From: Macrostomum lignano | Taxonomy: Eukaryota | Length of the DNA: 64,000 bases | NCBI GenBank assembly: GCA_002269645.1 | Contig: NIVC01000666.1 | Coordinates: forward strand, 248,001 to 312,000 | Direction of reading: 5' to 3' | Part shown: positions 21,340 to 61,604 of the stretch, one piece after another | Layout of the letters: the number at the start of each line of letters is the position of its first letter | Numbering within the stretch: the stretch's first letter is position 1 | Made by a program: the position numbers and the translations under genes | Notes under the pieces: model-generated | The model's database searches: none | Told to the model about the DNA's origin: nothing | What the model saw: the letters and a program-made list of their open reading frames with translations, nothing else

Positions 21340-21561
21340 ATGAAGTTCCTTGGTCGCCGATTCGTGAAGGCGCCCAAATACTTGACGCCTCGCCGGCTCG
21401 AGGCCGTGTCCAACTGGTCCTTCACCGCCGGCACCTATGCGGCCTCGGCCATCGTCCTGCTGTTGTTCGTGACCGACTGGCGGGTCACCAACCGCTTCAT
21501 CCCAATCTACGGCAGGAAGTTCGCCGAGATGGACAAAGCCGAGGAGGAGCGACTGAACTAG
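21340..21561 (+). CDS. UQCR11: Cytochrome b-c1 complex subunit 10 (6.4 kDa subunit), 73 aa, single coding exon
   Basis: NWSFTAGTYAASAIVLLLFVTDWRVTNRFIPIYGRKF matches the family pattern NW.PT...WG...LVW.TDWR.I...VPY...KF; one TM helix; AATAAA shortly downstream. Confidence 0.88.
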   Translation: MKFLGRRFVKAPKYLTPRRLEAVSNWSFTAGTYAASAIVLLLFVTDWRVTNRFIPIYGRKFAEMDKAEEERLN

Positions 21562-21884
21562 CGATCTTGACTAAACCAATAGCAGATTTGACGCTGTAAA
21601 CAAACTTTAATAAACTAATTTAGTTCTTACTACTAACCGAAGTAGCATTAGTAGGAAGTGTTTTTCTTCAAACTACAATCTAAGCGATGCGTGTTTTTAA
21701 CGGCAGACAAATTAGTGTAGTAAATGATACTTTGTCATCAACCGAAATTCTTGTGTACTGAGTGTCCAGTCCAGGCCTAGATAAAAATAAATGCGATTGA
21801 AACAACAGAGTTCACATCCACTTTTGCTTAGCTTTGAAGTTATTTATTTTTATTGAAAGTATGTAGATATTAATTTGTGAAATT

Positions 21885-22395
21885 AGCTACCGATATGTGA
21901 AATTAGCATCCCAATATGTGGAATTAGCATCCCATATGTGGAATTAGCATCCCAATATTTGGAATTAGCATCCCATATGTGGAATTAGCATCCCATATGT
22001 GAAATTAGCATCCCAATATGTGGAATTAGCATCCCACATGTGAAATTAGCATCCCATATGTGGAATTAGCATCCCATATGTGAAATTAGCATCCCATATG
22101 TGGAATTAGCATCCCATATGTGGAATTAGCTACCCACATGTGAAATTAGCTACCCACATGTGAAATTAGCTACTCATATGTGAATTTGGTATCCCATATG
22201 TTAAAGAAGCATCCCATGTGTAAAATTAGCATCCCATATGGGAAATTAGCATCCCATATGTGAAATTAGCATCCCATATGGGAAATTAGCATCCCATGTG
22301 TAAAATTAGCATCCCAAATGTGAAATTAGCATCCCATATATGAAATTAGCATCCCATATGTGAAATTAGCATCCCATATGTGAAATTAGCATAGC
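21885..22395. repeat. 19-20-bp minisatellite (TGTGAAATTAGCATCCCATA)
   Basis: Tandem copies. Confidence 0.95.
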
Positions 22396-22537
22396 AATTG
22401 TGAAATAAAACTGTCTTCTCTTTGAAATTAATTTCAGAAACGCGCCAAAATTTACAGAATTATGAGCCATTAATATTTTGTTAAACTCGGTGAGTACATT
22501 ATGGGTGCTGTTTATAAAGAGTTTATCCCATTTATTA

Positions 22538-22770
22538 ATAAATCCCATGATGACAAACTCACATTTGAAATTTCCGGGCATCATTGCAGTGCAGATTTTA
22601 CACTTGATTCTTTTGTCTTTACTTTTTTGTTTTATTATCTAATGAGTGCCTGATTATTCGTTATCTTTTACATTGTTTGCTAGTTATTATTCTACAATTC
22701 GTTACGCCATTAATCAGTGCTGCAGTGCAGTCCCGTTCACACATGATACGGGTTATGAGATCTGATTATA
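22538..22770 (+). ncRNA. Box C/D guide RNA copy 1, SNORD97-like; predicted guide for Cm34 of elongator tRNA-Met
   Basis: C box ATGATGA 22547-22553; D box CTGA 22762-22765; guide CGGGTTATGAGA(T) just upstream of D; long internal hairpin with an AT-rich loop; intronic, 89 nt from the 3' splice site. Confidence 0.75.
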
Positions 22771-22916
22771 ATTCAAAGCACCTTTGTTTTATGTAAGCAA
22801 AGTTTACCTCAGGATTCAAATTTTAATGACAACAAAATAATTGATCTATTTTAGGCAATTCGAGAACTGCACTACTGATGGTAAGTAGTTGGATTATTTA
22901 CCTAGATATATTCTCA

Positions 22917-23150
22917 TAGTAGCACAATGATGACAAAACACAATTTGAAGCAAAGATCACCGCGTCGAGCTGACTCAGGTTGATGAAATCGAATTTATGT
23001 TTTAGCTTTACCTAATTTATGTAAAAATTAATCTTTATTTTTATTTTATTTTTGTTATAATTACTTTTATAAACCAGCTTTGACTTGAGCTCGGCTTTGC
23101 TCGTGTAGTCTTTGATCCGTGATACAGGTTATGAGAGCTGAGTGCTACTG
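22917..23150 (+). ncRNA. Box C/D guide RNA copy 2, SNORD97-like; predicted guide for Cm34 of elongator tRNA-Met
   Basis: C box ATGATGA 22927-22933; D box CTGA 23138-23141; 8-bp terminal stem AGTAGCAC/GTGCTACT; guide CAGGTTATGAGA(G); internal hairpin; intronic, 100 nt from the 3' splice site. Confidence 0.82.
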
Positions 23151-23519
23151 CTGTGTTTCATTAGCTCTGTCTGTTTAGGTAGCAAATTCATGTGGTGTGA
23201 CACTAATCTAATTATACTTTGTTTTTTGTGGAAATTTTTAGACTGAGATCAGCTTCCAAGATGATGGATGATGCTGCAACCTGAGAACCCGAGTGACCGT
23301 TGACAACTGTATAATGTTTATTATCTTTACAAATATAGCAATGGTATTGTCTTTTCGGAGAGCTTTTCTTCTCTACTAAGATTTTGTGCTTTAATTTTTT
23401 TATGTGCGTTTCACATTTATGTGGAGTACGGCACGTTCACGATCATAGGTAAAGCATTGAAGGCTTGGGTGAACTTATAATTGGAGACATTCTTGCAGGG
23501 ACGGTTGAAGGAATGAGGG

Positions 23520-24790
23520 TTTCATTGAAGGGTTGGTTGGGTGAAGGGATCATTGAAGGGTTAGTTGGGTGAAGGGATCATTGAAGGGTTGGGTGGGTGA
23601 AGGGATCATTGAAGGGTTAGTTGGGTGAAGGGATCATTGAAGGGTTGGGTGGGTGAAGGTATCATTGAAGGGTTAGTTGGATGAAGGGATCATTGAAGGG
23701 TTGGGGGGTGGGTGAAGGGATCATTGAAGGGTTGGGTGGGTGAAGGGATCATTGAAGGGTTGGTTGGGTGAAGGGATCATTGAAGGGTTGGTTGGGTGAA
23801 GGGATCATTGAAGGGTTGGGTGGGTGAAGGGATCATTGAAGGGTTGGGTGAGTGAAGGGATCATTGAAGGGTTGGGTGGGTGAAGGGATCATTGAAGGGT
23901 TGGGTGGGTGAAGGGATCATTGAAGGGTTGGGTGGGTGAAGGGATCATTGAAGGGTTGGTTGGGTGAAGGGATCATTGAAGGGTTGGTTGGGTGAAGGGA
24001 TTATTGAAGGTTTGGGTGAAGGGATCATTGAAGGGTTGGGGGGTGGGTGAAGGGATCATTGAAGGGTTGGGTGGGTGAAGGGATCATTGAAGGGTTGGTT
24101 GGGTGAAGGGATCATTGAAGGGTTGGTTGGGTGAAGGGATTATTGAAGGTTTGGGTGAAGGGATTATTGAAGGTTTGGGTGAAGGGATTATTGAAGGTTT
24201 GGGTGAAGGGATCATTGAAGGGTTGGGTGGGTGAAGGGATCATTGAAGGGTTGGTTGGGTGAAGAGATCATTGAAGGGTTGGTTGGGTGAAGGGATCATT
24301 GAAGGGTTGGGTGGGTGAAGGGATCATTGAAGGGTTAGTTGGGTGAAGGGATTATTGAAGGTTTGGGTGAAGGGATCATTGAAGGGTTGGGGGGTGGGTG
24401 AAGGGATCATTGAAGGGTTGGGTGGGTGAAGGGATCATTGAAGGGTTGGTTGGGTGAAGGGATCATTGAAGGGTTGGTTGGGTGAAGGGATCATTGAAGG
24501 GTTGGGTGGGTGAAGGGATCATTGAAGGGTTGGGTGGGTGAAAGAATCATTGAAGGGTTGGTTGGGTAAAGGGATCATTGAAGGGTTGGTTGGGTAAAGG
24601 GATCATTGAAGGGTTGGGTGGGTGAAGGGATCATTAAAGGGTTGGGTGGGTGAAGGGATCATTAAAGGTTGGTTGGTTTGAATAGATTATTGAAGGTTTG
24701 GGTGAAGGGATCATTGGGGTAAAGGGATGATTGAAGGGTTAGGTGAAGGGAGTATTGAAAGGTTATGTGTAGGGATTATTGAAAGGTTGG
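23520..24790. repeat. ~25-33-bp minisatellite (GGGTGAAGGGATCATTGAAGGGTTGGKT)
   Basis: Tandem G-rich copies. Confidence 0.96.
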
Positions 24791-25104
24791 GTGAGGAGAT
24801 GATTGATAAGTTGAACACATCTATCTGTGTTTTTGATATGCGAGAGATTCAATCTATACTACTGAGAAAAAGTAGGCGAATAAAGATTTGAATTGTAAAA
24901 TCTCTCACATAACCCGAGAAATGTCGCCATAAAAGAAACGTCTGTGCCCACAGAGAGTAGATGTTTAAATCTTATTCGTCTACTTTCTCAGTAGTCTGAA
25001 TTGAAAATCTCCACAATAAAAGGTATCACTGTAAGGTTAGTAAAGCTTAGAATAATCGATTTATACCCATATTTCTGTGCCAAGAGAACACAGCAGTGAC
25101 TAGC

Positions 25105-26121
25105 ATGGACCGGCAGGCCAAGATAGAGAAGCTGAAGGCGCAGGTGGACTCTGTCCGTATCGGCGGCAAGGGCTCCGCCCGCCGCAAGAAGAAGGTTCTG
25201 CACAAGAACACTGGGACTGACGAGCGGAAGGTCACCGCCACGCTGAAGAAGCTGGGCGTCAATTCCATACCCGGCATCGAGGAGGTGAACATGTTCAAGG
25301 ATAACAACGAGGTCATTCACTTCAACAATCCCAAGGTGCAGGCCTCTCTGCAGGCCAACACCTTCGCCATCACTGGCCAGTCTGAGACCAAGCGGCTCAC
25401 CGAGCTGCTGCCCACAGTCTGGAACCAGATGGGGCCGGACAACTTCGCCAACCTCAAGAGGCTGGCTACTGGTGCCGGGGGCCTTGGTGAGTGCTGCAGC
25501 TGCTGCTGCGCTTTTTGCTGGGCTCTGGCGTTCACTTATCCTTCACCCATCCCTTCACCCATCCCACTTCACCCATCCCACTTCACCCATCCCTTCACCC
25601 ATCCCTTTACCTATCCCTTCACCCATCCCTTCACCCATCCCACTTCACCCATCCCACTTCATTCATCCCTTCACCCATCCCTTCACTCATCCCTTCATTC
25701 ATCCCTTCACTCATTCCTTCACCCATCCCCTCACTCACCCCTTCACTCATTCCTTCACCCATCCCCTCACTCACCCCTTCACTCATTCCTTCACCCATCC
25801 CCTCACTCACCCCTTCACTTATTCCTTCACCCATCCCTTCACTCATCCCTTCACCCATCCCTTCACTCATCCCTTCACCTATCTCCTCACTCATCCCTTC
25901 ACTCATCCCTTCACGCATCCCTTCACTCATCCCTTCACTCATCCCTTCACTCATCCCTTCACCCTCGTCACCCCGTAGGCCTGTCTCAGCCAGAGGAAGG
26001 CGCCGCTGGAGGCGCTGTCGACAGCGCTGGGACGGCGGCCTCGGGCGCTGCCGCCGCTGCCGACGACGACGACGTCCCGGAGCTGGTCGGCAACTTCGAC
26101 GAGGCCGCCAAGACCGAATGA
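25105..26121 (+). CDS. BTF3: Nascent polypeptide-associated complex beta subunit; exons 25105-25486, 25979-26121; 174 aa
   Basis: [52 protein letters not shown] and C-terminal [16 protein letters not shown]; phase-1 GT-AG intron. Confidence 0.97.
25530..25965. repeat. 12-bp minisatellite (ATCCCTTCACYC), BTF3 intron
   Basis: Tandem copies fill the intron. Confidence 0.93.
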
Positions 26122-56135: not shown

Positions 56136-59100
56136 CTACTGAAACCTGATGAGGTACCTCGGCGCCGCCTGCTCCGGTCGGTACACAATGTACTCATCGT
56201 TCAGCACTCCTCCTGTGCCCTTCGTGTTCCGTCTGGCGAACACCGAGTCGTAGCCGGCACCATTGACGGCACTCAGGTTCAGGTGGTTCTGCGGCTTGTC
56301 GCACACCATCGTTCTCCCAAGTAGGACGTCGCAGAGCAGAAGCGACATTGTTCCGGACTCGCAACAGTACTGAATACTCTTCGTGGTGTCCGTGGCAAAG
56401 TAGATCCCTGCACCGTACATTCCACGTGAGCCCACCTTGAATCCTTCTTTGATGATGAGCTCGGCGATTGCGTTTCTAGTTCCATGGAAGAACAGCTCTG
56501 GAACGGCGTCCTTCTTGACCAGCTGGCTGCTCACATCCAGAAGACGTCGGTCTAGAGCTGGGTTCTCAATCTTCTCGATGCTCAGAATTGCTCTCACCGT
56601 GACTGAGTGCTCACTCTTGATGTACCGCATCACCCGATCGTGCACTTTGAAGTATTCGACTGCCGTGTTCTCGTCGGTCTCCGTCAGCATTTTTCGCTTG
56701 ATTTCGCTTCCATGAGCTGACTGCAGCTGGCGCAGCCTCATCTGCTTCTCCAAACCCCAACAGGCAGAGCACGACTGACCCTCAAGCAGTCTGGCAAGAG
56801 CGCAGCAAGCAACTGTCTCTTCGTGACCGCACTGAAACTTCTTGGTCACATCGGTGAGACATTCTTCAGAAAGCTCCCAGCACTGACACTCATGGCGACA
56901 GAGTTTCCTAAATGCCTTCTCCGGACATGGAGGACAGGGCGAGGTTGAGCACACAGACTGGCATTTGTGTCCACACGGCAGCGTCTTCTCGCATTGTCTC
57001 TTACACGCAGCCAGCGACGCTGTGGAAGATTGGCTGCACGGAGTTCTGAGCGCGTGATCACACGAGAGCTTCACAGTCCTAATTCGGTCACAATGAGTTT
57101 GATTCTTCCCACACGGACTCCCAAATTGCTCTTTGCATGCGAGGCACCGTTTGGAAACGTTCACGATGCACAGCTGAGGAGAGCAAGTCTCGAAACACTT
57201 CTGTGTGCATTGGTGGCCACACGGCAGCTTCTTGGAGCACGTTTCTGTGCACTTTACGATTTTGTATTTCGTATTTTTCGTATTACTTTGTATTATTTTC
57301 GTATTTCGTATTACTTTCTTCCACTCAAAGCACAGCATTTGCTTCACGTGTCCACACGGCAGAGTCTTTGCAACAGATTCTTGGCATGTTCCAAACGGCT
57401 GGTTGCACAGCTTGGATTGGACGTGGCCGCAGCTCAGCTGAGCTTCGATATTCTGGGTGCAGTGCTTCGAATCACATATTTCTGAGCACTTGAGCGGACA
57501 AGGATGACCACAACTCAGCATGCGAATGCACTTTTCTTCGCATTTCAAGTGCCTAGGGTCTGATGACAAGAAGCACTGGATTTTTGTGGTGTGTGAGCAC
57601 GGCAGCTTCACAATGACCATTTTGTCGCACCGATCATGCTCATGCCAAGGCTGGCACAGCTTCGGACAGACGTGTTCACCACATGGCATGGTTTCCACGC
57701 ACTTGCTTCTGCAGAAGACTCCCTTCATTCTAGACAATTCGGCTGCACTTCTCCAGCTGTGCTCTGTTCCGTGCTTCCGGCACACCACCGGAAAGTCGGA
57801 TCGCAGAACGCCGTCCTCCTCAAAAGCGGTCAGCAGCTGGCTCCACTCGGCGCACTTTCTCAGCAAAGAAGCTTTGCCGATGAAGACCAGACCGCAGTGC
57901 GACCTCGACTGCGCGACGCATCGGCGGTTGAGCGATGCGAGAAATCCGGGCTTCTCGCTGCGAACAAGCGACACCAAGACAATGTCGTTCTCGTCGCCTT
58001 GGTACACATCGATACTGTGCACTTTGATGAAGCCTTCGTTAGCCTCATTCGCGAGTGCTGAACGATTTGAAACGTCTCTCTCCCAATCCTCCAAACGTGG
58101 TCGCAGTTCCCGTCGGATGAGCCGCACCTGGCCCTGATACGGAGTGAGGATGGTGAGCTGGCTTGGCTTGTACCCGAACCTCAGGAACGTCATCGCTACT
58201 TCAACGATCAGCTCTGCCTCACCGTCGTTAACGTAGCTTCGCTCGCCTGACTCCGACATGTTCTTTACGTCCCAGAATGCAACGGCCTTCGGCATGAACG
58301 ATGGAATGTCGTGACCCTTCACGCTGTCTATATTGTCCTGCAGGTCCGGATAGACGTCGAGTTTCAGATACTTGGAAATGTCAGGTCGCATTCGGTTCTG
58401 GAACTGTAAGCAGTCAAACGGAAAACCGCAGTTGATCAGTCTCTCCATCATCGAGACATCCAGGTGGCAGTGCTTCACTAGCTCATAGTTCTCGACGGTC
58501 GGCCGAAGCTGCTTGTGATCACCGATCAGGAAGAGTCGCTCCGTCCAGTCACCAAGACAGCCAAGAAGCATTGGCTCCATGATCTCTGCTGCTTCCTCCA
58601 CAATAACTGTGTTCGGTCTGAGCCTCTTCAGCAACTCGTTATTGATTGAAGCACCCGTGATGGTCATCGCAATCACGTCGACATCTTGACAGATCTTGAC
58701 ATCTCTGTTCAAGTTAGCTTCCTTGTACTCGTCTCGATGTCGTTCATACTGTCTGAACAAAAAGTTCAGTTTGGAGCTGTGTCTCGTCCAAGCTTTGTCA
58801 AAGTGGTCCAACAAGCAACCCTGCATGAACAGAAATCGGTCTTCAGGCTTGAGCTCCCACAGGTTTTGGGTGTAGCGCAACGTATGCCATTTCTCTGAGA
58901 CGATTCGAATCAGTCGTTGGTCCAGTCTCACGGGGCTGGGTTCTTGCTGACTCAAGTTCAGGCTGAAGGTGGTTCGACTGTCTCCTCCTGAAGCCAGAAG
59001 CCGCTCTGTCTTTATCTGTTCCTGTTCGTCGTTGAGTTCGTCCTCTTCTGCCTCTTCGTCAGTCTTATTGGTCGTGCCGCTGCTCGCAGTGCAAGAGCCT

Positions 59101-61604
59101 GTCTGCAATGCCTGAAGCAGATTTGGCATGAACTTATCAATTACATACTGTGGCGGAATCCACTGCCGCACAGCAAACCTCAGCTTATCGATAGGATTAG
59201 GCAATCCTGCGAGTTGGCTTCGATATTTGATTCCGGCCGGGTGATAAAAAAACTGTTTGCAGAATCGGATTTGGTTCTCTTCACTCCAAAATTTGGACAG
59301 GAAGAGCTCATCAAAAAATATACTTTCCTGAAGACAAACATTTTCCAGATGTTCCAACAGAGCTTTCTTCGCATCATCAACAAGACGCCACTGTTCCCTG
59401 GAGTCCGTGTCCTGCACGGCGTCTCTCCTGGAGCGGATGTCTAAATCTTTGGTTAGCTCAGTCTTCTTTGAACGACCACCAAAGCGAATCAAGTCGACTT
59501 TCGAACTTTGCTGCGTGAGAATCTTACGAATGAACTCGTCTAAAGCGTTGTTCTTGTAGGTGACCAACAGAACGGGACCATTCCTGTGTCTCTTGGTCTC
59601 CTGCGCTGTGAGGTACCTCACGAGGTGTGTACCAACGTAGGTCTTTCCACAGCCTGGCGGTCCCTGGATGACGGAGATTTTTCGCTGAGTACAGTTTCTA
59701 AACGCTTGCGTTTGCGACTCATCTAACCGACTGGAGATCTCGTCTTTAAATAATTTAATCGCGCTTTTCTCACGTTGAGCAGATGAAAGCCTCGATCGTA
59801 GAATACCTGAGTGAGGCCATCTAGAGGTTAAAGAGTCTCGCGAATAAGCCAGCACATCTGACTCTGCTGGCTCATCTTCACTGTCTGATTCTTCCACTTG
59901 TATTGAATCGAAAGTGCACGACACCAGCTCCTTCTCCAGTGGCAACGTCTTGCCGTTCAGAGCCTGCACGTTTGCCAGCACGTGCCGGTAAGCTTGGAAG
60001 TAAGTCGGAGACTCGGCCAACCACAGACTCGACTTCTGAAGTCGAAGCCGTCGTAGCAGATCACACAGCTCAATGCTGCCCGATTCGAATATCGGCTCGA
60101 CAAAGATCAGACCGAACTGGTTCAGCAGACCGGAGTCCCTGTTACTCACCGTCACGCAAACAAACTCTGTGAAAGTTTCGTCAAACGACAAGCAGAGCAA
60201 ATTTCCGAACATCAGCAACGGAGACTTCTCCCAGTTTTTCACCACCCTATTGAACGGCTCGATCTTGAGCACCAAGGACAACTCTTTGTGAGTAATATCG
60301 ATGCCTCTGAGCTCGACTTGATGGTAGACTGTCATGTCTCGGCGATTCAAATTGCCGCCAATGAACTGCTGGATGCCGGATCTCAGCTTCTCGAAGCAGT
60401 CCGCACGCAGCAGCTTCAGGTTCGTCTCGAGATAATCGGCCACCGAGTCGTACGGAGCATGAGTTTGCATTGGCGGAAGCAGCCGGATTGTCTCGCCCAT
60501 GTCGGTCGAGCTCAACACCTCCTCCTTACTCAAGGTGGCTGACAGCTCGTGCCAGCTCAGGTCGGAGTTTCTCACTGGCAGGAACCTCCGGCACATCAGC
60601 TTGGCCAGCTCGAAAGCATCTTTGCCAGAAAAGTGAGTGTCGTAGAACTGCTGGCACAGCTGCATGATGAGGTAGCATCTGTCTGGAACCAGCTGACCAA
60701 CCATCTCGCAGAACGTCTTGAGTGTACTCACTTTGTCTGCTGAGTACCTTTTGCTCGCTGCCTCTGTGAACAGCTGGCGACAGGCGCCTCGATCGAGCTG
60801 GAAGTTCTTCTCGTGCATGAGATGCTGGATGCTCAGGCCGATGTCGCGCTGCTGGTATGCACTCGCTCTACTGTTGACTCGTACGAAGAACTCCAACACA
60901 GTGTACAGCGAGTCAGCACTCAGTCGGGGCCACTGACCGACGATCGACCAGCCAGGAGGAACCTCCAGCAACTGCTGAATGTCTCTGTTACTCGTCTTGC
61001 TACTCAGCGACTCAATGAAGCTGCTGACTTTTTGATCGCTTCGTTGGACGGGCTTCTCCAGCCGCATGTCCATTGTCGGCTTCTGGCCAGGCTTCGCCTC
61101 GCGCGGTGTGCAGGTGACCTGGTCTCCATGCTCGGGGTCCCAGCCGCTAAAGTACAGCTTCCGAGGCAGAACTGTTTGCTTACCGGTGTCGGTCGTCACG
61201 TGGTATATTTTCAATGGCCTATCGTCAAGCACGTGGCTGTTCGTAATAGTCCCTGCGATTATCGGACGAACCATTAGTTGTGTAGCCACTTGTTGCTTTT
61301 GTGCCTGCAGTTGAGCCGCTTCTTGTGAAGTGTTTGAAGGCAAGTCAGCTACTTGGGATGAGGCTTCAGGTCGCGAGCTGCCCAATGGAGCCCGGCTGAT
61401 GTCGACCGCAGATGTTTTGTTTCCTTTGTGCTCGATTCGGTACCGCAGCCTGTCTCCAACCTGCAGGTTGAGCTGCTGAACCCAGTAGTACCAGAAAATG
61501 ACCCCGTGGCGGGCTGACGGGTCATCCTCAAACGATACAAATCCATGTTTGCCCAGTGTGATGCTGCTGACGTAACCTAGAGAAGCAGATGGCAAAAATC
61601 GCAT
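56136..61604 (-). CDS. ZNFX1: ZNFX1-like SF1 helicase / NF-X1 zinc-finger protein fused to a C-terminal PARP-type ADP-ribosyltransferase domain; 1822 aa, single coding exon
   Basis: IQGPPGCGKT, VIVEEAAE, LIGDHKQLRP, QNRMRP, ILTPYQGQ, IDVYQGDENDIVLVSLVRS, SLNRRCVAQSR; many CGH.C...C zinc fingers; FHGT...GMYGAGIYFA...KS.QY...DEYIVY. An in-frame TAG lies 12 nt before the ATG. The symbol denotes family, not proven orthology. Confidence 0.93.
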   Translation of the reverse strand: MRFLPSASLGYVSSITLGKHGFVSFEDDPSARHGVIFWYYWVQQLNLQVGDRLRYRIEHKGNKTSAVDISRAPLGSSRPEASSQVADLPSNTSQEAAQLQAQKQQVATQLMVRPIIAGTITNSHVLDDRPLKIYHVTTDTGKQTVLPRKLYFSGWDPEHGDQVTCTPREAKPGQKPTMDMRLEKPVQRSDQKVSSFIESLSSKTSNRDIQQLLEVPPGWSIVGQWPRLSADSLYTVLEFFVRVNSRASAYQQRDIGLSIQHLMHEKNFQLDRGACRQLFTEAASKRYSADKVSTLKTFCEMVGQLVPDRCYLIMQLCQQFYDTHFSGKDAFELAKLMCRRFLPVRNSDLSWHELSATLSKEEVLSSTDMGETIRLLPPMQTHAPYDSVADYLETNLKLLRADCFEKLRSGIQQFIGGNLNRRDMTVYHQVELRGIDITHKELSLVLKIEPFNRVVKNWEKSPLLMFGNLLCLSFDETFTEFVCVTVSNRDSGLLNQFGLIFVEPIFESGSIELCDLLRRLRLQKSSLWLAESPTYFQAYRHVLANVQALNGKTLPLEKELVSCTFDSIQVEESDSEDEPAESDVLAYSRDSLTSRWPHSGILRSRLSSAQREKSAIKLFKDEISSRLDESQTQAFRNCTQRKISVIQGPPGCGKTYVGTHLVRYLTAQETKRHRNGPVLLVTYKNNALDEFIRKILTQQSSKVDLIRFGGRSKKTELTKDLDIRSRRDAVQDTDSREQWRLVDDAKKALLEHLENVCLQESIFFDELFLSKFWSEENQIRFCKQFFYHPAGIKYRSQLAGLPNPIDKLRFAVRQWIPPQYVIDKFMPNLLQALQTGSCTASSGTTNKTDEEAEEDELNDEQEQIKTERLLASGGDSRTTFSLNLSQQEPSPVRLDQRLIRIVSEKWHTLRYTQNLWELKPEDRFLFMQGCLLDHFDKAWTRHSSKLNFLFRQYERHRDEYKEANLNRDVKICQDVDVIAMTITGASINNELLKRLRPNTVIVEEAAEIMEPMLLGCLGDWTERLFLIGDHKQLRPTVENYELVKHCHLDVSMMERLINCGFPFDCLQFQNRMRPDISKYLKLDVYPDLQDNIDSVKGHDIPSFMPKAVAFWDVKNMSESGERSYVNDGEAELIVEVAMTFLRFGYKPSQLTILTPYQGQVRLIRRELRPRLEDWERDVSNRSALANEANEGFIKVHSIDVYQGDENDIVLVSLVRSEKPGFLASLNRRCVAQSRSHCGLVFIGKASLLRKCAEWSQLLTAFEEDGVLRSDFPVVCRKHGTEHSWRSAAELSRMKGVFCRSKCVETMPCGEHVCPKLCQPWHEHDRCDKMVIVKLPCSHTTKIQCFLSSDPRHLKCEEKCIRMLSCGHPCPLKCSEICDSKHCTQNIEAQLSCGHVQSKLCNQPFGTCQESVAKTLPCGHVKQMLCFEWKKVIRNTKIIQSNTKNTKYKIVKCTETCSKKLPCGHQCTQKCFETCSPQLCIVNVSKRCLACKEQFGSPCGKNQTHCDRIRTVKLSCDHALRTPCSQSSTASLAACKRQCEKTLPCGHKCQSVCSTSPCPPCPEKAFRKLCRHECQCWELSEECLTDVTKKFQCGHEETVACCALARLLEGQSCSACWGLEKQMRLRQLQSAHGSEIKRKMLTETDENTAVEYFKVHDRVMRYIKSEHSVTVRAILSIEKIENPALDRRLLDVSSQLVKKDAVPELFFHGTRNAIAELIIKEGFKVGSRGMYGAGIYFATDTTKSIQYCCESGTMSLLLCDVLLGRTMVCDKPQNHLNLSAVNGAGYDSVFARRNTKGTGGVLNDEYIVYRPEQAAPRYLIRFQ

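What the first reader, a model, noticed from the sequence alone, without database searches (positions are those of the whole stretch)
22538..23150. Tandem pair of long box C/D RNAs predicted to 2'-O-methylate the wobble C34 of elongator tRNA-Met
Seen: two paralogous ~230-nt intronic units share C box ATGATGACAAA..CA..TTTGAA and 3' end TGATAC(G/A)GGTTATGAGA(T/G)CTGA, while the hairpin between them has diverged but still base-pairs. The 12-nt guide pairs with the eukaryotic eMet anticodon arm UCUCAUAAUCUG (one or two G-U pairs), and the fifth nucleotide upstream of box D (G) falls on C34. Established: human SNORD97 and SCARNA97 guide Cm34 of eMet tRNA and have a similar GATTATGAGAT guide and long hairpin; tRNA-targeting C/D guides are rare in eukaryotes. 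Inference: these are likely unannotated invertebrate members, and the pair may mirror the nucleolar/Cajal-body duo.
Basis: partly seen in the sequence, partly recalled or inferred. Interest (0 to 1): 0.8.

Follow-up and report, generated by a model that had tools for sequence, protein, structure and literature searches.

The report
Flatworm pair of tRNA-Met methylation guides
Two neighbouring introns of a Macrostomum lignano (flatworm) gene each carry a box C/D guide RNA whose guide matches the human SNORD97/SCARNA97 guide that methylates the wobble base of elongator methionine tRNA, so this is a new member of a known family, duplicated in this lineage.

Summary
Two roughly 220-nt units lie in consecutive short introns: U1 at 22547-22765 and U2 at 22918-23149. 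Each has a perfect C box (AUGAUGA), a perfect D box (CUGA), a degenerate D' (UUGA) and C' (UGAUAC), and a long internal hairpin with a U-rich loop. Each also has a 12-nt guide, GGGUUAUGAGAU in U1 and AGGUUAUGAGAG in U2.

In the canonical register the fifth nucleotide upstream of box D pairs with C34 of the conserved elongator tRNA-Met anticodon arm. That gives 11-13 contiguous pairs. The last 13 nt of U1 are identical to the 3' end of human SCARNA97.

The window is Macrostomum lignano. All three homeologous copies of the locus keep both units. There are 0 of 107 variable columns in boxes, guides and terminal stem, against about 8-9% in loops and intron flanks.

So these are SNORD97/SCARNA97-type Cm34 guides. 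Single homologues in invertebrates and plants were already reported (Vitali and Kiss 2019), which makes this a new member and not a new kind. The proposed nucleolar/Cajal-body parallel has no support here. The duplication is lineage-specific and both copies are of the long type.

Three things could not be tested: the species' own tRNA-Met, expression of the RNAs, and competing rRNA or snRNA targets. Interest is modest.

The parts
22438..22489 (+). Putative host-transcript exon 1. It is 52 nt, non-coding, preceded by tttcag and followed by GTGAGT.
   Evidence: Splice consensus read from the sequence. It has 1 of 52 variable columns among homeologs, against about 8% in intron flanks. There is no RNA evidence.
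22547..22765 (+). U1, a box C/D RNA measuring 219 nt from C box to D box. Parts: C box 22547-22553; D'-like UUGA 22565-22568; long stem 22575-22597 paired with 22712-22735, enclosing a U-rich loop; C'-like UGAUAC 22744-22749; guide GGGUUAUGAGAU 22750-22761; D box 22762-22765. It has no terminal stem.
22855..22880 (+). Putative host exon 2. It is 26 nt, preceded by ttttag and followed by GTAAGT. It starts 89 nt downstream of the U1 D box.
22918..23149 (+). U2, a box C/D RNA. Parts: 8-bp terminal stem AGUAGCAC/GUGCUACU (22918-22925 paired with 23142-23149); C box 22927-22933; D'-like UUGA 22945-22948; long stem 22951-22985 paired with 23078-23114, enclosing a U/A-rich loop; C'-like UGAUAC 23120-23125; guide AGGUUAUGAGAG 23126-23137; D box 23138-23141.
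23242..23300 (+). Putative host exon 3. It is preceded by tttttag and starts 92 nt downstream of the U2 terminal stem. Its 3' boundary is not determined.
   Evidence: The weak sR9-like C/D motif here loses its CUGA in L002 and L003.

Best explanation
U1 and U2 are two paralogous, intron-encoded box C/D guide RNA genes of the SNORD97/SCARNA97 family in the flatworm Macrostomum lignano.

Proposed mechanism, with the basis of each step:
1. Each RNA is released from its own short intron of a host transcript with short exons and no evident coding potential. That transcript lies between a UQCR11-like gene and the BTF3/NAC-beta gene. The splice sites are inferred from consensus only.
2. Each RNA assembles through its C and D boxes with the Snu13, Nop56, Nop58 and fibrillarin core. 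This follows from family knowledge and was not tested.
3. The 12-nt element between the C'-like box and box D pairs with nucleotides 30/31-41 of the elongator tRNA-Met(CAU) anticodon stem-loop. This was shown in silico against the arm that is invariant in animals and plants.
4. Fibrillarin then 2'-O-methylates the nucleotide opposite D+5, the wobble cytidine C34. This is inferred from the D+5 rule and from the human knockout data.

The long internal hairpin most likely brings the degenerate D' and C' boxes together. The pair arose by an old tandem duplication in the flatworm lineage, well before the recent genome duplication that produced the three homeologous loci.
For: - Canonical C and D boxes in both units, and a strong terminal stem in U2.
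- One unit per intron. The D box lies 89 nt (U1) and 100 nt (U2) upstream of a consensus 3' splice site.
- Pairing register: U1 forms 13 contiguous pairs, 3 of them G-U. U2 forms 12, with 1 G-U. D+5 pairs with C34 in both. Duplex energies are about -14 to -17 kcal/mol, comparable to the human SCARNA97 guide.
- The tRNA core GUCUCAUAAUCU is invariant from human to Drosophila, Bombyx, Ciona and Arabidopsis.
- The U1 3' end UUAUGAGAUCUGA is identical to the 3' end of human SCARNA97, deduced from its FISH probe.
- Human SNORD97 and SCARNA97 are experimentally required for Cm34.
- Organism and copies: the neighbouring UQCR11-like protein is found exactly in M. lignano assembly GCA_002269645.1 on three contigs, and each carries both units.
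- Among the homeologs there are 0 of 107 variable columns in boxes, guides and terminal stem. The long stems have 3 of 124, the loops 19 of 206 and the intron flanks 27 of 326. The probability of zero changes in the core is about 7e-4.
- The same signature appears elsewhere. It consists of AUGAUGACAA, an 11-nt spacer, NUGAA, then UGAUAC-N-GRUUAUGAGAG-CUGA. It occurs in a 118-nt C/D RNA within a snoRNA cluster on an AT-rich metagenomic contig. It also matches the Rfam consensus of C. elegans ceN56, an RNA that falls after C/D snoRNP depletion.
Against: - There is no expression, processing or methylation data for this species.
- The M. lignano tRNA-Met(CAU) sequence could not be obtained. No tRNA genes occur in the window or in four M. 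lignano loci.
- No Rfam family reaches its threshold, and no SNORD97-named family appears even at E <= 10.
- U1 lacks a terminal stem.
- Both guides need a G-U pair at U39, where the human, nematode and metagenomic guides have A-U.
- Whole-unit folding energies are not unusual, with z-scores of +0.58 and -1.59.
- The homeologs are about 97% identical, so the conservation test has limited power.
- M. lignano rRNA and snRNA were not available to rule out a better target.
Confidence: 0.8

Rival explanations
1. Only U2 is a functional guide. U1 would be a decaying or poorly processed duplicate that keeps its box and guide sequences by recent descent.
For: U1 has no terminal 5'/3' stem: flank pairing is 0 kcal/mol and 735 of 1000 shuffles do as well. 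U2 has 8-9 bp at -14.5 kcal/mol. The U1 guide needs three G-U pairs.
Against: The U1 C box, D box, C'/D' modules and guide are perfect and invariant in all three homeologs. Its loop accumulates 10 changes in 115 nt, and its 20-bp internal stem is kept. U1 and U2 have diverged to saturation elsewhere, so the shared modules have been retained over a long time. Some intronic snoRNAs are processed without a terminal stem (my own knowledge).
Confidence: 0.12
2. The two paralogues have divided the work, either by compartment (a nucleolar/Cajal-body duo) or by target. For example, U1 may also recognise initiator tRNA-Met.
For: - The units differ in terminal stem, in D+1 (U versus G), in D+12 (G versus A) and in internal domains.
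- The GGG at D+10 to D+12 of U1 forms G-U, G-C and G-U pairs with the elongator. With positions C39-C41 of the human-type initiator arm it forms three G-C pairs.
- That gives 8 contiguous Watson-Crick pairs at -13.3 kcal/mol, against -2.9 for the human and metagenomic guides.
- The U-rich internal loops are 62-70% pyrimidine, against 51-58% in the intron flanks. This loosely recalls the SCARNA97 pyrimidine-rich Cajal-body signal.
Against: - No localisation data exist.
- Both units carry the long U-rich domain, so nothing separates a 'sno' form from a 'sca' form.
- The loops are far less pyrimidine-pure than described for SCARNA97.
- With a C33-type initiator, C34 would sit at the end of the helix next to a D+4 mismatch. 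That is normally incompatible with guided methylation (my own knowledge).
- The M. lignano initiator sequence is unknown.
- The vertebrate duo arose in vertebrates.
Confidence: 0.1
3. The guide's real target is another RNA, such as an rRNA or snRNA, and the tRNA-Met match is secondary.
For: The rRNA and snRNA sequences of this species could not be examined. Most C/D guides target rRNA.
Against: The guide core is the same as in human SNORD97/SCARNA97. For those RNAs a screen of rRNA, snRNA, snoRNA, tRNA and miRNA sequences found tRNA-Met, and knockouts abolished Cm34. The guide element is conserved from this flatworm to a nematode family consensus, an AT-rich microbial contig and human. This parallels the invariance of the tRNA arm.
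Confidence: 0.04
4. The motifs co-occur by chance in AT-rich intron sequence and there is no RNA gene.
For: Rfam gives no significant hit. Whole-unit folding z-scores are unremarkable.
Against: The 15-mer occurs twice and in none of 100 shuffles. Each copy sits at the same distance from a perfect C box, at the same position in its intron, and with significant internal stems. No substitutions fall in the core among homeologs. An independent metagenomic homologue has the same 5' module, which was not part of the search pattern.
Confidence: 0.01

Closest known systems
Human SCARNA97 (formerly SNORD133). It is 216 nt, lies in a LARP4 intron and is Cajal-body specific.
   Same: - It is an intronic box C/D RNA of about the same length.
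- Its D-box guide ends in UUAUGAGAU-CUGA, identical over 13 nt to U1.
- D+5 falls on C34 of elongator tRNA-Met.
- It has a long U/pyrimidine-rich internal insert between the D' and C' regions.
   Different: - The host gene differs.
- The human insert is a 93-nt purine-poor tract said not to fold. The flatworm units instead have a 20-33-bp stem closing a loop of 62-70% pyrimidine.
- The human guide has A at D+10 and D+12, where U1 has G.
- No full-length sequence similarity was detectable with the tools at hand.
Human SNORD97 (U97). It lies in an EIF4G2 intron and is nucleolar.
   Same: It has the same conserved D-box antisense element and the same target, Cm34 of tRNA-Met(CAU). It works together with a paralogue.
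   Different: Neither flatworm unit is of the short type. The vertebrate SNORD97/SCARNA97 split is reported as vertebrate-specific, so U1 and U2 are not orthologues of the two human genes.
Caenorhabditis ceN56 (Rfam RF01643, typed only as 'sRNA')
   Same: The Rfam consensus has the 5' module AAUGAUuACAAAC and the 3' module CCaUGAUACaGAUUAUGAGAG. These are almost identical to U2 (CCGUGAUACAGGUUAUGAGAG). It also has terminal pairing. CeN56 levels fall when C/D snoRNP proteins are depleted.
   Different: It is about 125 nt and lacks the long hairpin. Its D box reads AUGA in the consensus. The match is only 16.4 bits (E = 2.4), far below the gathering score of 60. I found no paper that links ceN56 to tRNA-Met.
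Single SNORD97/SCARNA97-like candidates reported in Drosophila, silkworm, honey bee, Ciona, Arabidopsis and rape (Vitali and Kiss 2019, Supplemental Fig. S3C)
   Same: They are non-vertebrate members with the invariant D-box antisense element.
   Different: They are reported as one gene per genome. Here there are two ancient paralogues in tandem, times three homeologous loci. Their sequences are only in a figure image, so I could not compare them.
Archaeal box C/D sRNA guiding Cm34 of elongator pre-tRNA-Met (Haloferax volcanii; Joardar et al. 2011, as cited)
   Same: It performs RNA-guided 2'-O-methylation of the same nucleotide of the same tRNA.
   Different: It is a short archaeal sRNA from a different domain of life. 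No sequence comparison was made here.

Membership tests
Box C/D snoRNA/scaRNA | 5' C box RUGAUGA | tested here: met
   The C box reads cAUGAUGA at 22547-22553 (U1) and aAUGAUGA at 22927-22933 (U2). It is invariant in three homeologs.
Box C/D snoRNA/scaRNA | 3' D box CUGA | tested here: met
   The D boxes are at 22762-22765 and 23138-23141 and are invariant.
Box C/D snoRNA/scaRNA | Terminal 5'/3' stem bringing the C and D boxes together | tested here: inconclusive
   U2 meets this feature with 8-9 bp at -14.5 kcal/mol, and only 1 of 1000 shuffles does as well. U1 does not: its flanks pair at 0 kcal/mol and 735 of 1000 shuffles do as well.
Box C/D snoRNA/scaRNA | Internal D' and C' boxes | tested here: inconclusive
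   Both units have degenerate copies at the expected places: UUGA 11 nt after box C, and UGAUAC 12 nt before box D. The same is seen in the L007 homologue. Degenerate boxes are common, and protein binding cannot be tested here.
Box C/D snoRNA/scaRNA | Intronic position, one RNA per intron, tens of nucleotides upstream of the 3' splice site | tested here: met
   Consensus GT and AG sites define introns of 365 and 361 nt. The D boxes lie 89 and 100 nt upstream of the acceptors. The exons are more conserved than the introns. The splice sites are not confirmed by RNA.
Box C/D snoRNA/scaRNA | A stable RNA bound by fibrillarin, Nop56, Nop58 and Snu13 | not testable with these tools
   No expression data were reachable. 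Exact look-ups of ORFs overlapping the units found no transcript contigs.
SNORD97/SCARNA97 (tRNA-Met Cm34 guides) | The D-box antisense element is complementary to the elongator tRNA-Met(CAU) anticodon stem-loop, with C34 opposite D+5 | tested here: met
   The register was computed against the vertebrate/Ciona, insect and plant arms. It gives 11-13 contiguous pairs with D+5 G paired to C34. The species' own tRNA was not available.
SNORD97/SCARNA97 (tRNA-Met Cm34 guides) | The phylogenetically invariant antisense sequence shared with the human RNAs | tested here: met
   UUAUGAGAU-CUGA in U1 is identical to the 3' end of human SCARNA97, deduced from the published probe. U2 differs only at D+1. 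Both differ from human at D+10 (G instead of A).
SNORD97/SCARNA97 (tRNA-Met Cm34 guides) | Detectable full-length homology, such as an Rfam covariance-model hit | tested here: not met
   There is no hit at gathering score in the window. No SNORD97 or U97 family is listed at E <= 10 over the units or over the L007 homologue. I could not confirm that such a model is in the library. The units are about 100 nt longer than typical members.
SNORD97/SCARNA97 (tRNA-Met Cm34 guides) | Host gene EIF4G2 (SNORD97) or LARP4 (SCARNA97) | tested here: not met
   The host here is a short-exon transcript between a UQCR11-like gene and BTF3/NAC-beta. Host identity is a vertebrate feature and probably does not define the wider family.
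SCARNA97 subtype | A pyrimidine-rich internal tract that acts as a Cajal-body localisation signal | tested here: inconclusive
   The loops are 54% and 53% U and 70% and 62% pyrimidine, against 51-58% pyrimidine in the intron flanks. This is a much weaker bias than the purine-poor human tract. Localisation is not testable here.
SNORD97/SCARNA97 (tRNA-Met Cm34 guides) | Cm34 on tRNA-Met depends on the RNA | not testable with these tools
   This needs an experiment. It has been shown only for the human RNAs.

The most novel reading that the evidence does not exclude
The flatworm pair may be a second, independent case of elongator tRNA-Met Cm34 being served by two diverged guide RNAs with divided roles. 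The division could be by compartment or by substrate. On the substrate side, the G residues at D+10 and D+12 of U1 are the only bases that pair both with U39/U41 of the elongator and with C39/C41 of the initiator. This gives U1 an 8-10-bp Watson-Crick match to initiator tRNA-Met that the human, nematode-consensus and metagenomic guides lack. If so, a two-guide arrangement would be a recurrent solution, not a vertebrate accident, and a C/D guide might reach initiator tRNA.
Probability: 0.1. Interest if true: 0.6.

Novelty: new member of a known kind. Interest (0 to 1): 0.33.

Why it matters
RNA-guided modification of a eukaryotic tRNA is known for essentially one family, SNORD97/SCARNA97. In human cells its product, Cm34, protects elongator tRNA-Met from stress-induced cleavage.

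This finding does four things:
- It adds Platyhelminthes to the family's range.
- It shows that at least one invertebrate carries two old paralogues, where single genes had been reported. That gives a tractable, transgenesis-capable flatworm in which to ask why two guides serve one nucleotide.
- It points to a recognisable family signature: AUGAUGACAA, an 11-nt spacer, NUGAA, then UGAUAC-N-GRUUAUGAGAK-CUGA.
- That signature appears to tie the uncharacterised nematode family ceN56 and a microbial-eukaryote-like snoRNA cluster to the same function.

It does not reveal a new mechanism.

Tried and rejected
- Rfam at gathering score on the whole window gave nothing.
- Rfam at E <= 10 on the units, on the 4.9-kb host region and on L007 gave no SNORD97-type hit, only the weak ceN56 match.
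- ARAGORN found no tRNA genes in the window, in four M. lignano loci or in the metagenomic loci. The species' tRNA-Met could therefore not be checked.
- A literature string search for flatworm tRNA-Met sequences returned nothing usable.
- An exact look-up of the ZNFX1-like ORF found nothing on record.
- Exact look-ups of two ORFs overlapping U1, tried as a back door to transcript contigs, also found nothing.
- The second M. lignano BTF3 paralogue locus (L008) has no SNORD97-like unit.
- Transcript contigs of a 74%-identical BTF3 (L009-L011) have a 39-nt 5' UTR unrelated to the host exons. They do not settle whether the host exons belong to BTF3.
- No other Macrostomum genome was reachable, so the duplication could not be dated by comparison.
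- The D' spacer as a second guide was rejected. It is only 11 nt and is not conserved between U1, U2 and L007 beyond CAA. The 7-nt match of U1 to the tRNA T arm is absent from U2.
- Metagenome hits L004 and L005 were rejected as chance matches inside coding-like sequence. About two such hits are expected for a pattern of this information content.
- The near-complement of the guide in the loop of the 24839-25012 hairpin was rejected as chance. It is not kept in the homeologs.

Full report
**1. What is in the sequence**

Reading 22200-23500 shows two units with the same layout.

U1:
- C box AUGAUGA at 22547-22553.
- An 11-nt spacer beginning CAAA.
- A D'-like UUGA at 22565-22568.
- A long hairpin, 22575-22597 paired with 22712-22735, around a loop of about 115 nt.
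- A C'-like UGAUAC at 22744-22749.
- The 12-nt element GGGUUAUGAGAU at 22750-22761.
- D box CUGA at 22762-22765.

U2 repeats this plan:
- C box at 22927-22933.
- UUGA at 22945-22948.
- Hairpin 22951-22985 paired with 23078-23114.
- UGAUAC at 23120-23125.
- AGGUUAUGAGAG at 23126-23137.
- CUGA at 23138-23141.
- In addition, an 8-bp terminal stem AGUAGCAC/GUGCUACU at 22918-22925 and 23142-23149.

The shared 15-mer GGTTATGAGANCTGA occurs exactly twice in the window and in none of 100 shuffles.

Outside the box and guide modules the two units have no detectable similarity. BLAST recovers only the 22-nt 3' module, and a forced global alignment gives 58% identity.

The internal hairpin arms pair far better than shuffled arms:
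- U1: -26.4 kcal/mol, 0 of 1000 shuffles as good.
- U2: -35.2 kcal/mol, 1 of 1000 shuffles as good.

Whole-unit folding energies are not exceptional, with z-scores of +0.58 and -1.59.

U2 has a significant terminal stem (-14.5 kcal/mol, 1 of 1000 shuffles). U1 has none.

**2. Genomic setting and organism**

The small ORF at 21340-21562 is a UQCR11-like protein (Pfam UCR_6-4kD). It is found exactly on three contigs of NCBI assembly GCA_002269645.1. That assembly is Mlig_3_7 of the neopolyploid flatworm Macrostomum lignano. The downstream BTF3/NAC-beta protein is 99% identical to an M. lignano entry.

The order on the + strand is:
- the UQCR11-like gene;
- a 20-nt minisatellite at 21876-22392;
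- a 52-nt exon at 22438-22489;
- intron 1, containing U1;
- a 26-nt exon at 22855-22880;
- intron 2, containing U2;
- an exon starting at 23242;
- a 28-nt minisatellite at 23522-24716;
- a strong hairpin at 24839-25012;
- the BTF3 coding sequence from 25105.

The exons have consensus splice sites and no meaningful ORF. The D boxes lie 89 and 100 nt upstream of the acceptors. This is the usual arrangement for intronic C/D snoRNAs (my own knowledge).

I could not decide whether these exons form a separate non-coding host gene or the 5' UTR of BTF3.

**3. Conservation**

All three homeologous loci carry both units. The window is identical to L001, and L002 and L003 are about 97% identical to it.

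Variable columns are distributed unevenly:

| Region | Variable columns |
|---|---|
| Boxes, spacers, guides and terminal stem | 0 of 107 |
| Long stems | 3 of 124 |
| Loops | 19 of 206 |
| Intron flanks | 27 of 326 |
| Exons | 3 of 132 |

Of the three changes in the long stems, one is A-U to G-U, one falls in a bulge, and one breaks the closing pair.

At the background rate, zero changes in the core has a probability of about 7e-4. With only three distinct sequences there is no compensatory covariation to report.

**4. Target**

Vitali and Kiss (PMC6601510) showed that human SNORD97 and SCARNA97 guide 2'-O-methylation of C34 of elongator tRNA-Met(CAU). Their Supplemental Fig. S4 shows that the arm core GUCUCAUAAUCU is invariant in vertebrates, Ciona, Drosophila, Bombyx, Arabidopsis and Brassica.

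I computed the ungapped register:
- U1 pairs D+1 to D+13 with nucleotides 30-42, with G-U pairs at positions 30, 39 and 41.
- U2 pairs D+2 to D+13 with nucleotides 31-42, with one G-U pair at position 39.
- In both units, D+5 (G) pairs with C34.

Duplex energies for the 12-mers are -13 to -15 kcal/mol, the same range as the human SCARNA97 12-mer.

The SCARNA97 FISH probe in the paper gives the human 3' end as GUGAAGGGUAAGAUUAUGAGAUCUGA. Its last 13 nt are identical to U1.

**5. Relatives**

Rfam gives no hit at gathering score and no SNORD97-type hit at E <= 10.

The one suggestive weak hit is ceN56 (RF01643; 16.4 bits, E = 2.4). Its consensus 3' end CCaUGAUACaGAUUAUGAGAG-AUGA and 5' end AAUGAUuACAAAC mirror U2. 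CeN56 is an unclassified C. elegans RNA that drops after C/D snoRNP depletion (PMC2442092).

A metagenome scan with TGATACNGRTTATGAGAKMTGA returned four loci:
- Two, L004 and L005, are coding-like chance hits.
- Two, L006 and L007 at 27-29% GC, carry a 118-nt C/D RNA. It has AUGAUGACAA, an 11-nt spacer, AUGAA, and then UUGAUACUGAUUAUGAGAGCUGA.
- In L007 this RNA sits inside a cluster with other C/D snoRNAs.

The 5' module of that RNA was not part of the search pattern, so it independently corroborates a conserved family signature.

**6. Interpretation**

The units are best read as two SNORD97/SCARNA97-type Cm34 guides.

The published view is that invertebrates and plants have one such gene and that the two vertebrate genes arose early in vertebrate evolution (the review PMC7038934). 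U1 and U2 share derived states: G at D+10, UGAUAC, CAAA and UUUGAA. They are also saturated with change elsewhere. They therefore represent an old duplication in the flatworm lineage, later multiplied by the recent genome duplication.

Nothing here supports a nucleolar/Cajal-body division of labour. Both units are long and both have U-rich loops. Those loops are 70% and 62% pyrimidine, against 51-58% in the flanks. That bias is much weaker than the purine-poor human tract.

**7. A lead that remains speculative**

G at D+10 and D+12 of U1 pairs with U39 and U41 of the elongator by wobble. It pairs with C39 and C41 of the initiator by Watson-Crick pairing.

Against the human initiator arm (sequence from PMC8216282), U1 forms 8 contiguous Watson-Crick pairs at -13.3 kcal/mol. 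The human and L007 guides reach only -2.9 kcal/mol.

With a C33 initiator, the D+4 mismatch next to C34 argues against methylation. With a U33 initiator, the match would be 10 bp.

**8. Limits**

There is no RNA evidence. The tRNA, rRNA and snRNA sequences of this species were not available. No second flatworm genome could be reached.

Noticed in passing
window 24839-25012 (+): A strong single-copy hairpin lies about 90 nt upstream of the BTF3 start codon, with a stem of about 45 bp (-62.9 kcal/mol, z = -8.1). The stem is invariant in the two other homeologs, and the substitutions fall in the loop. It is not repeated elsewhere in the window or the fetched loci, so it does not look like a MITE in these data. 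Its function is unknown.
   Followed up: partly
Rfam RF01643 (ceN56) versus window 23045-23146: The consensus of the nematode 'sRNA' family ceN56 carries the same 5' and 3' modules as U2, including the guide GAUUAUGAGAG. This places C34 of tRNA-Met at D+5. ceN56 therefore looks like the nematode SNORD97-type guide. I found no paper that says so.
   Followed up: partly
L007 1187-1521 and L006 1-180: AT-rich freshwater metagenomic contigs hold a cluster of three box C/D snoRNAs: 1187-1245, the SNORD97-like RNA at 1297-1414, and about 1464-1521. The cluster lies next to a GDT1/UPF0016-like ORF. The source organism was not identified but is probably a microbial eukaryote.
   Followed up: partly
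window 22556-22562: The U1 spacer AACUCAC, just after box C, is complementary to GUGAGUU (nucleotides 49-55, T arm) of the vertebrate/fly-type elongator tRNA-Met. The match is absent from U2 and may be chance.
   Followed up: partly
window 22453-22469: Host exon 1 contains TTACAGAATTATGAGCC, which resembles the C'-guide module ACAGGTTATGAGAGC. It could be a relic of a further copy or a coincidence.
   Followed up: no
window 23239-23294: Exon 3 gives a weak archaeal sR9-like C/D hit (22.3 bits, E = 0.067) with GAUGAUG and CUGA motifs. The CUGA reads CUGC in homeologs L002 and L003, so it is probably not a snoRNA.
   Followed up: yes
window 21876-22392, 23522-24716, 25540-25964 and many other stretches: The window is packed with minisatellites with units of 20, 28 and 12 nt. 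One lies inside the BTF3 intron. The 28-nt array appears to be about 680 nt shorter in homeologs L002 and L003, judging from the shorter distance between U2 and the BTF3 start. Many long 'ORFs' in the window are artefacts of these repeats.
   Followed up: partly
window 56136-61604 (-): An uninterrupted 1822-aa ORF looks like a ZNFX1-type helicase/NFX zinc-finger protein with a C-terminal PARP-like domain. This is judged by eye only. The exact product is not on record in the protein collection.
   Followed up: no
L008 (NIVC01000016.1): M. lignano has a second BTF3 paralogue, 73% identical, at another locus near LSM and ribosomal L30-family genes. That locus has no SNORD97-like unit.
   Followed up: yes
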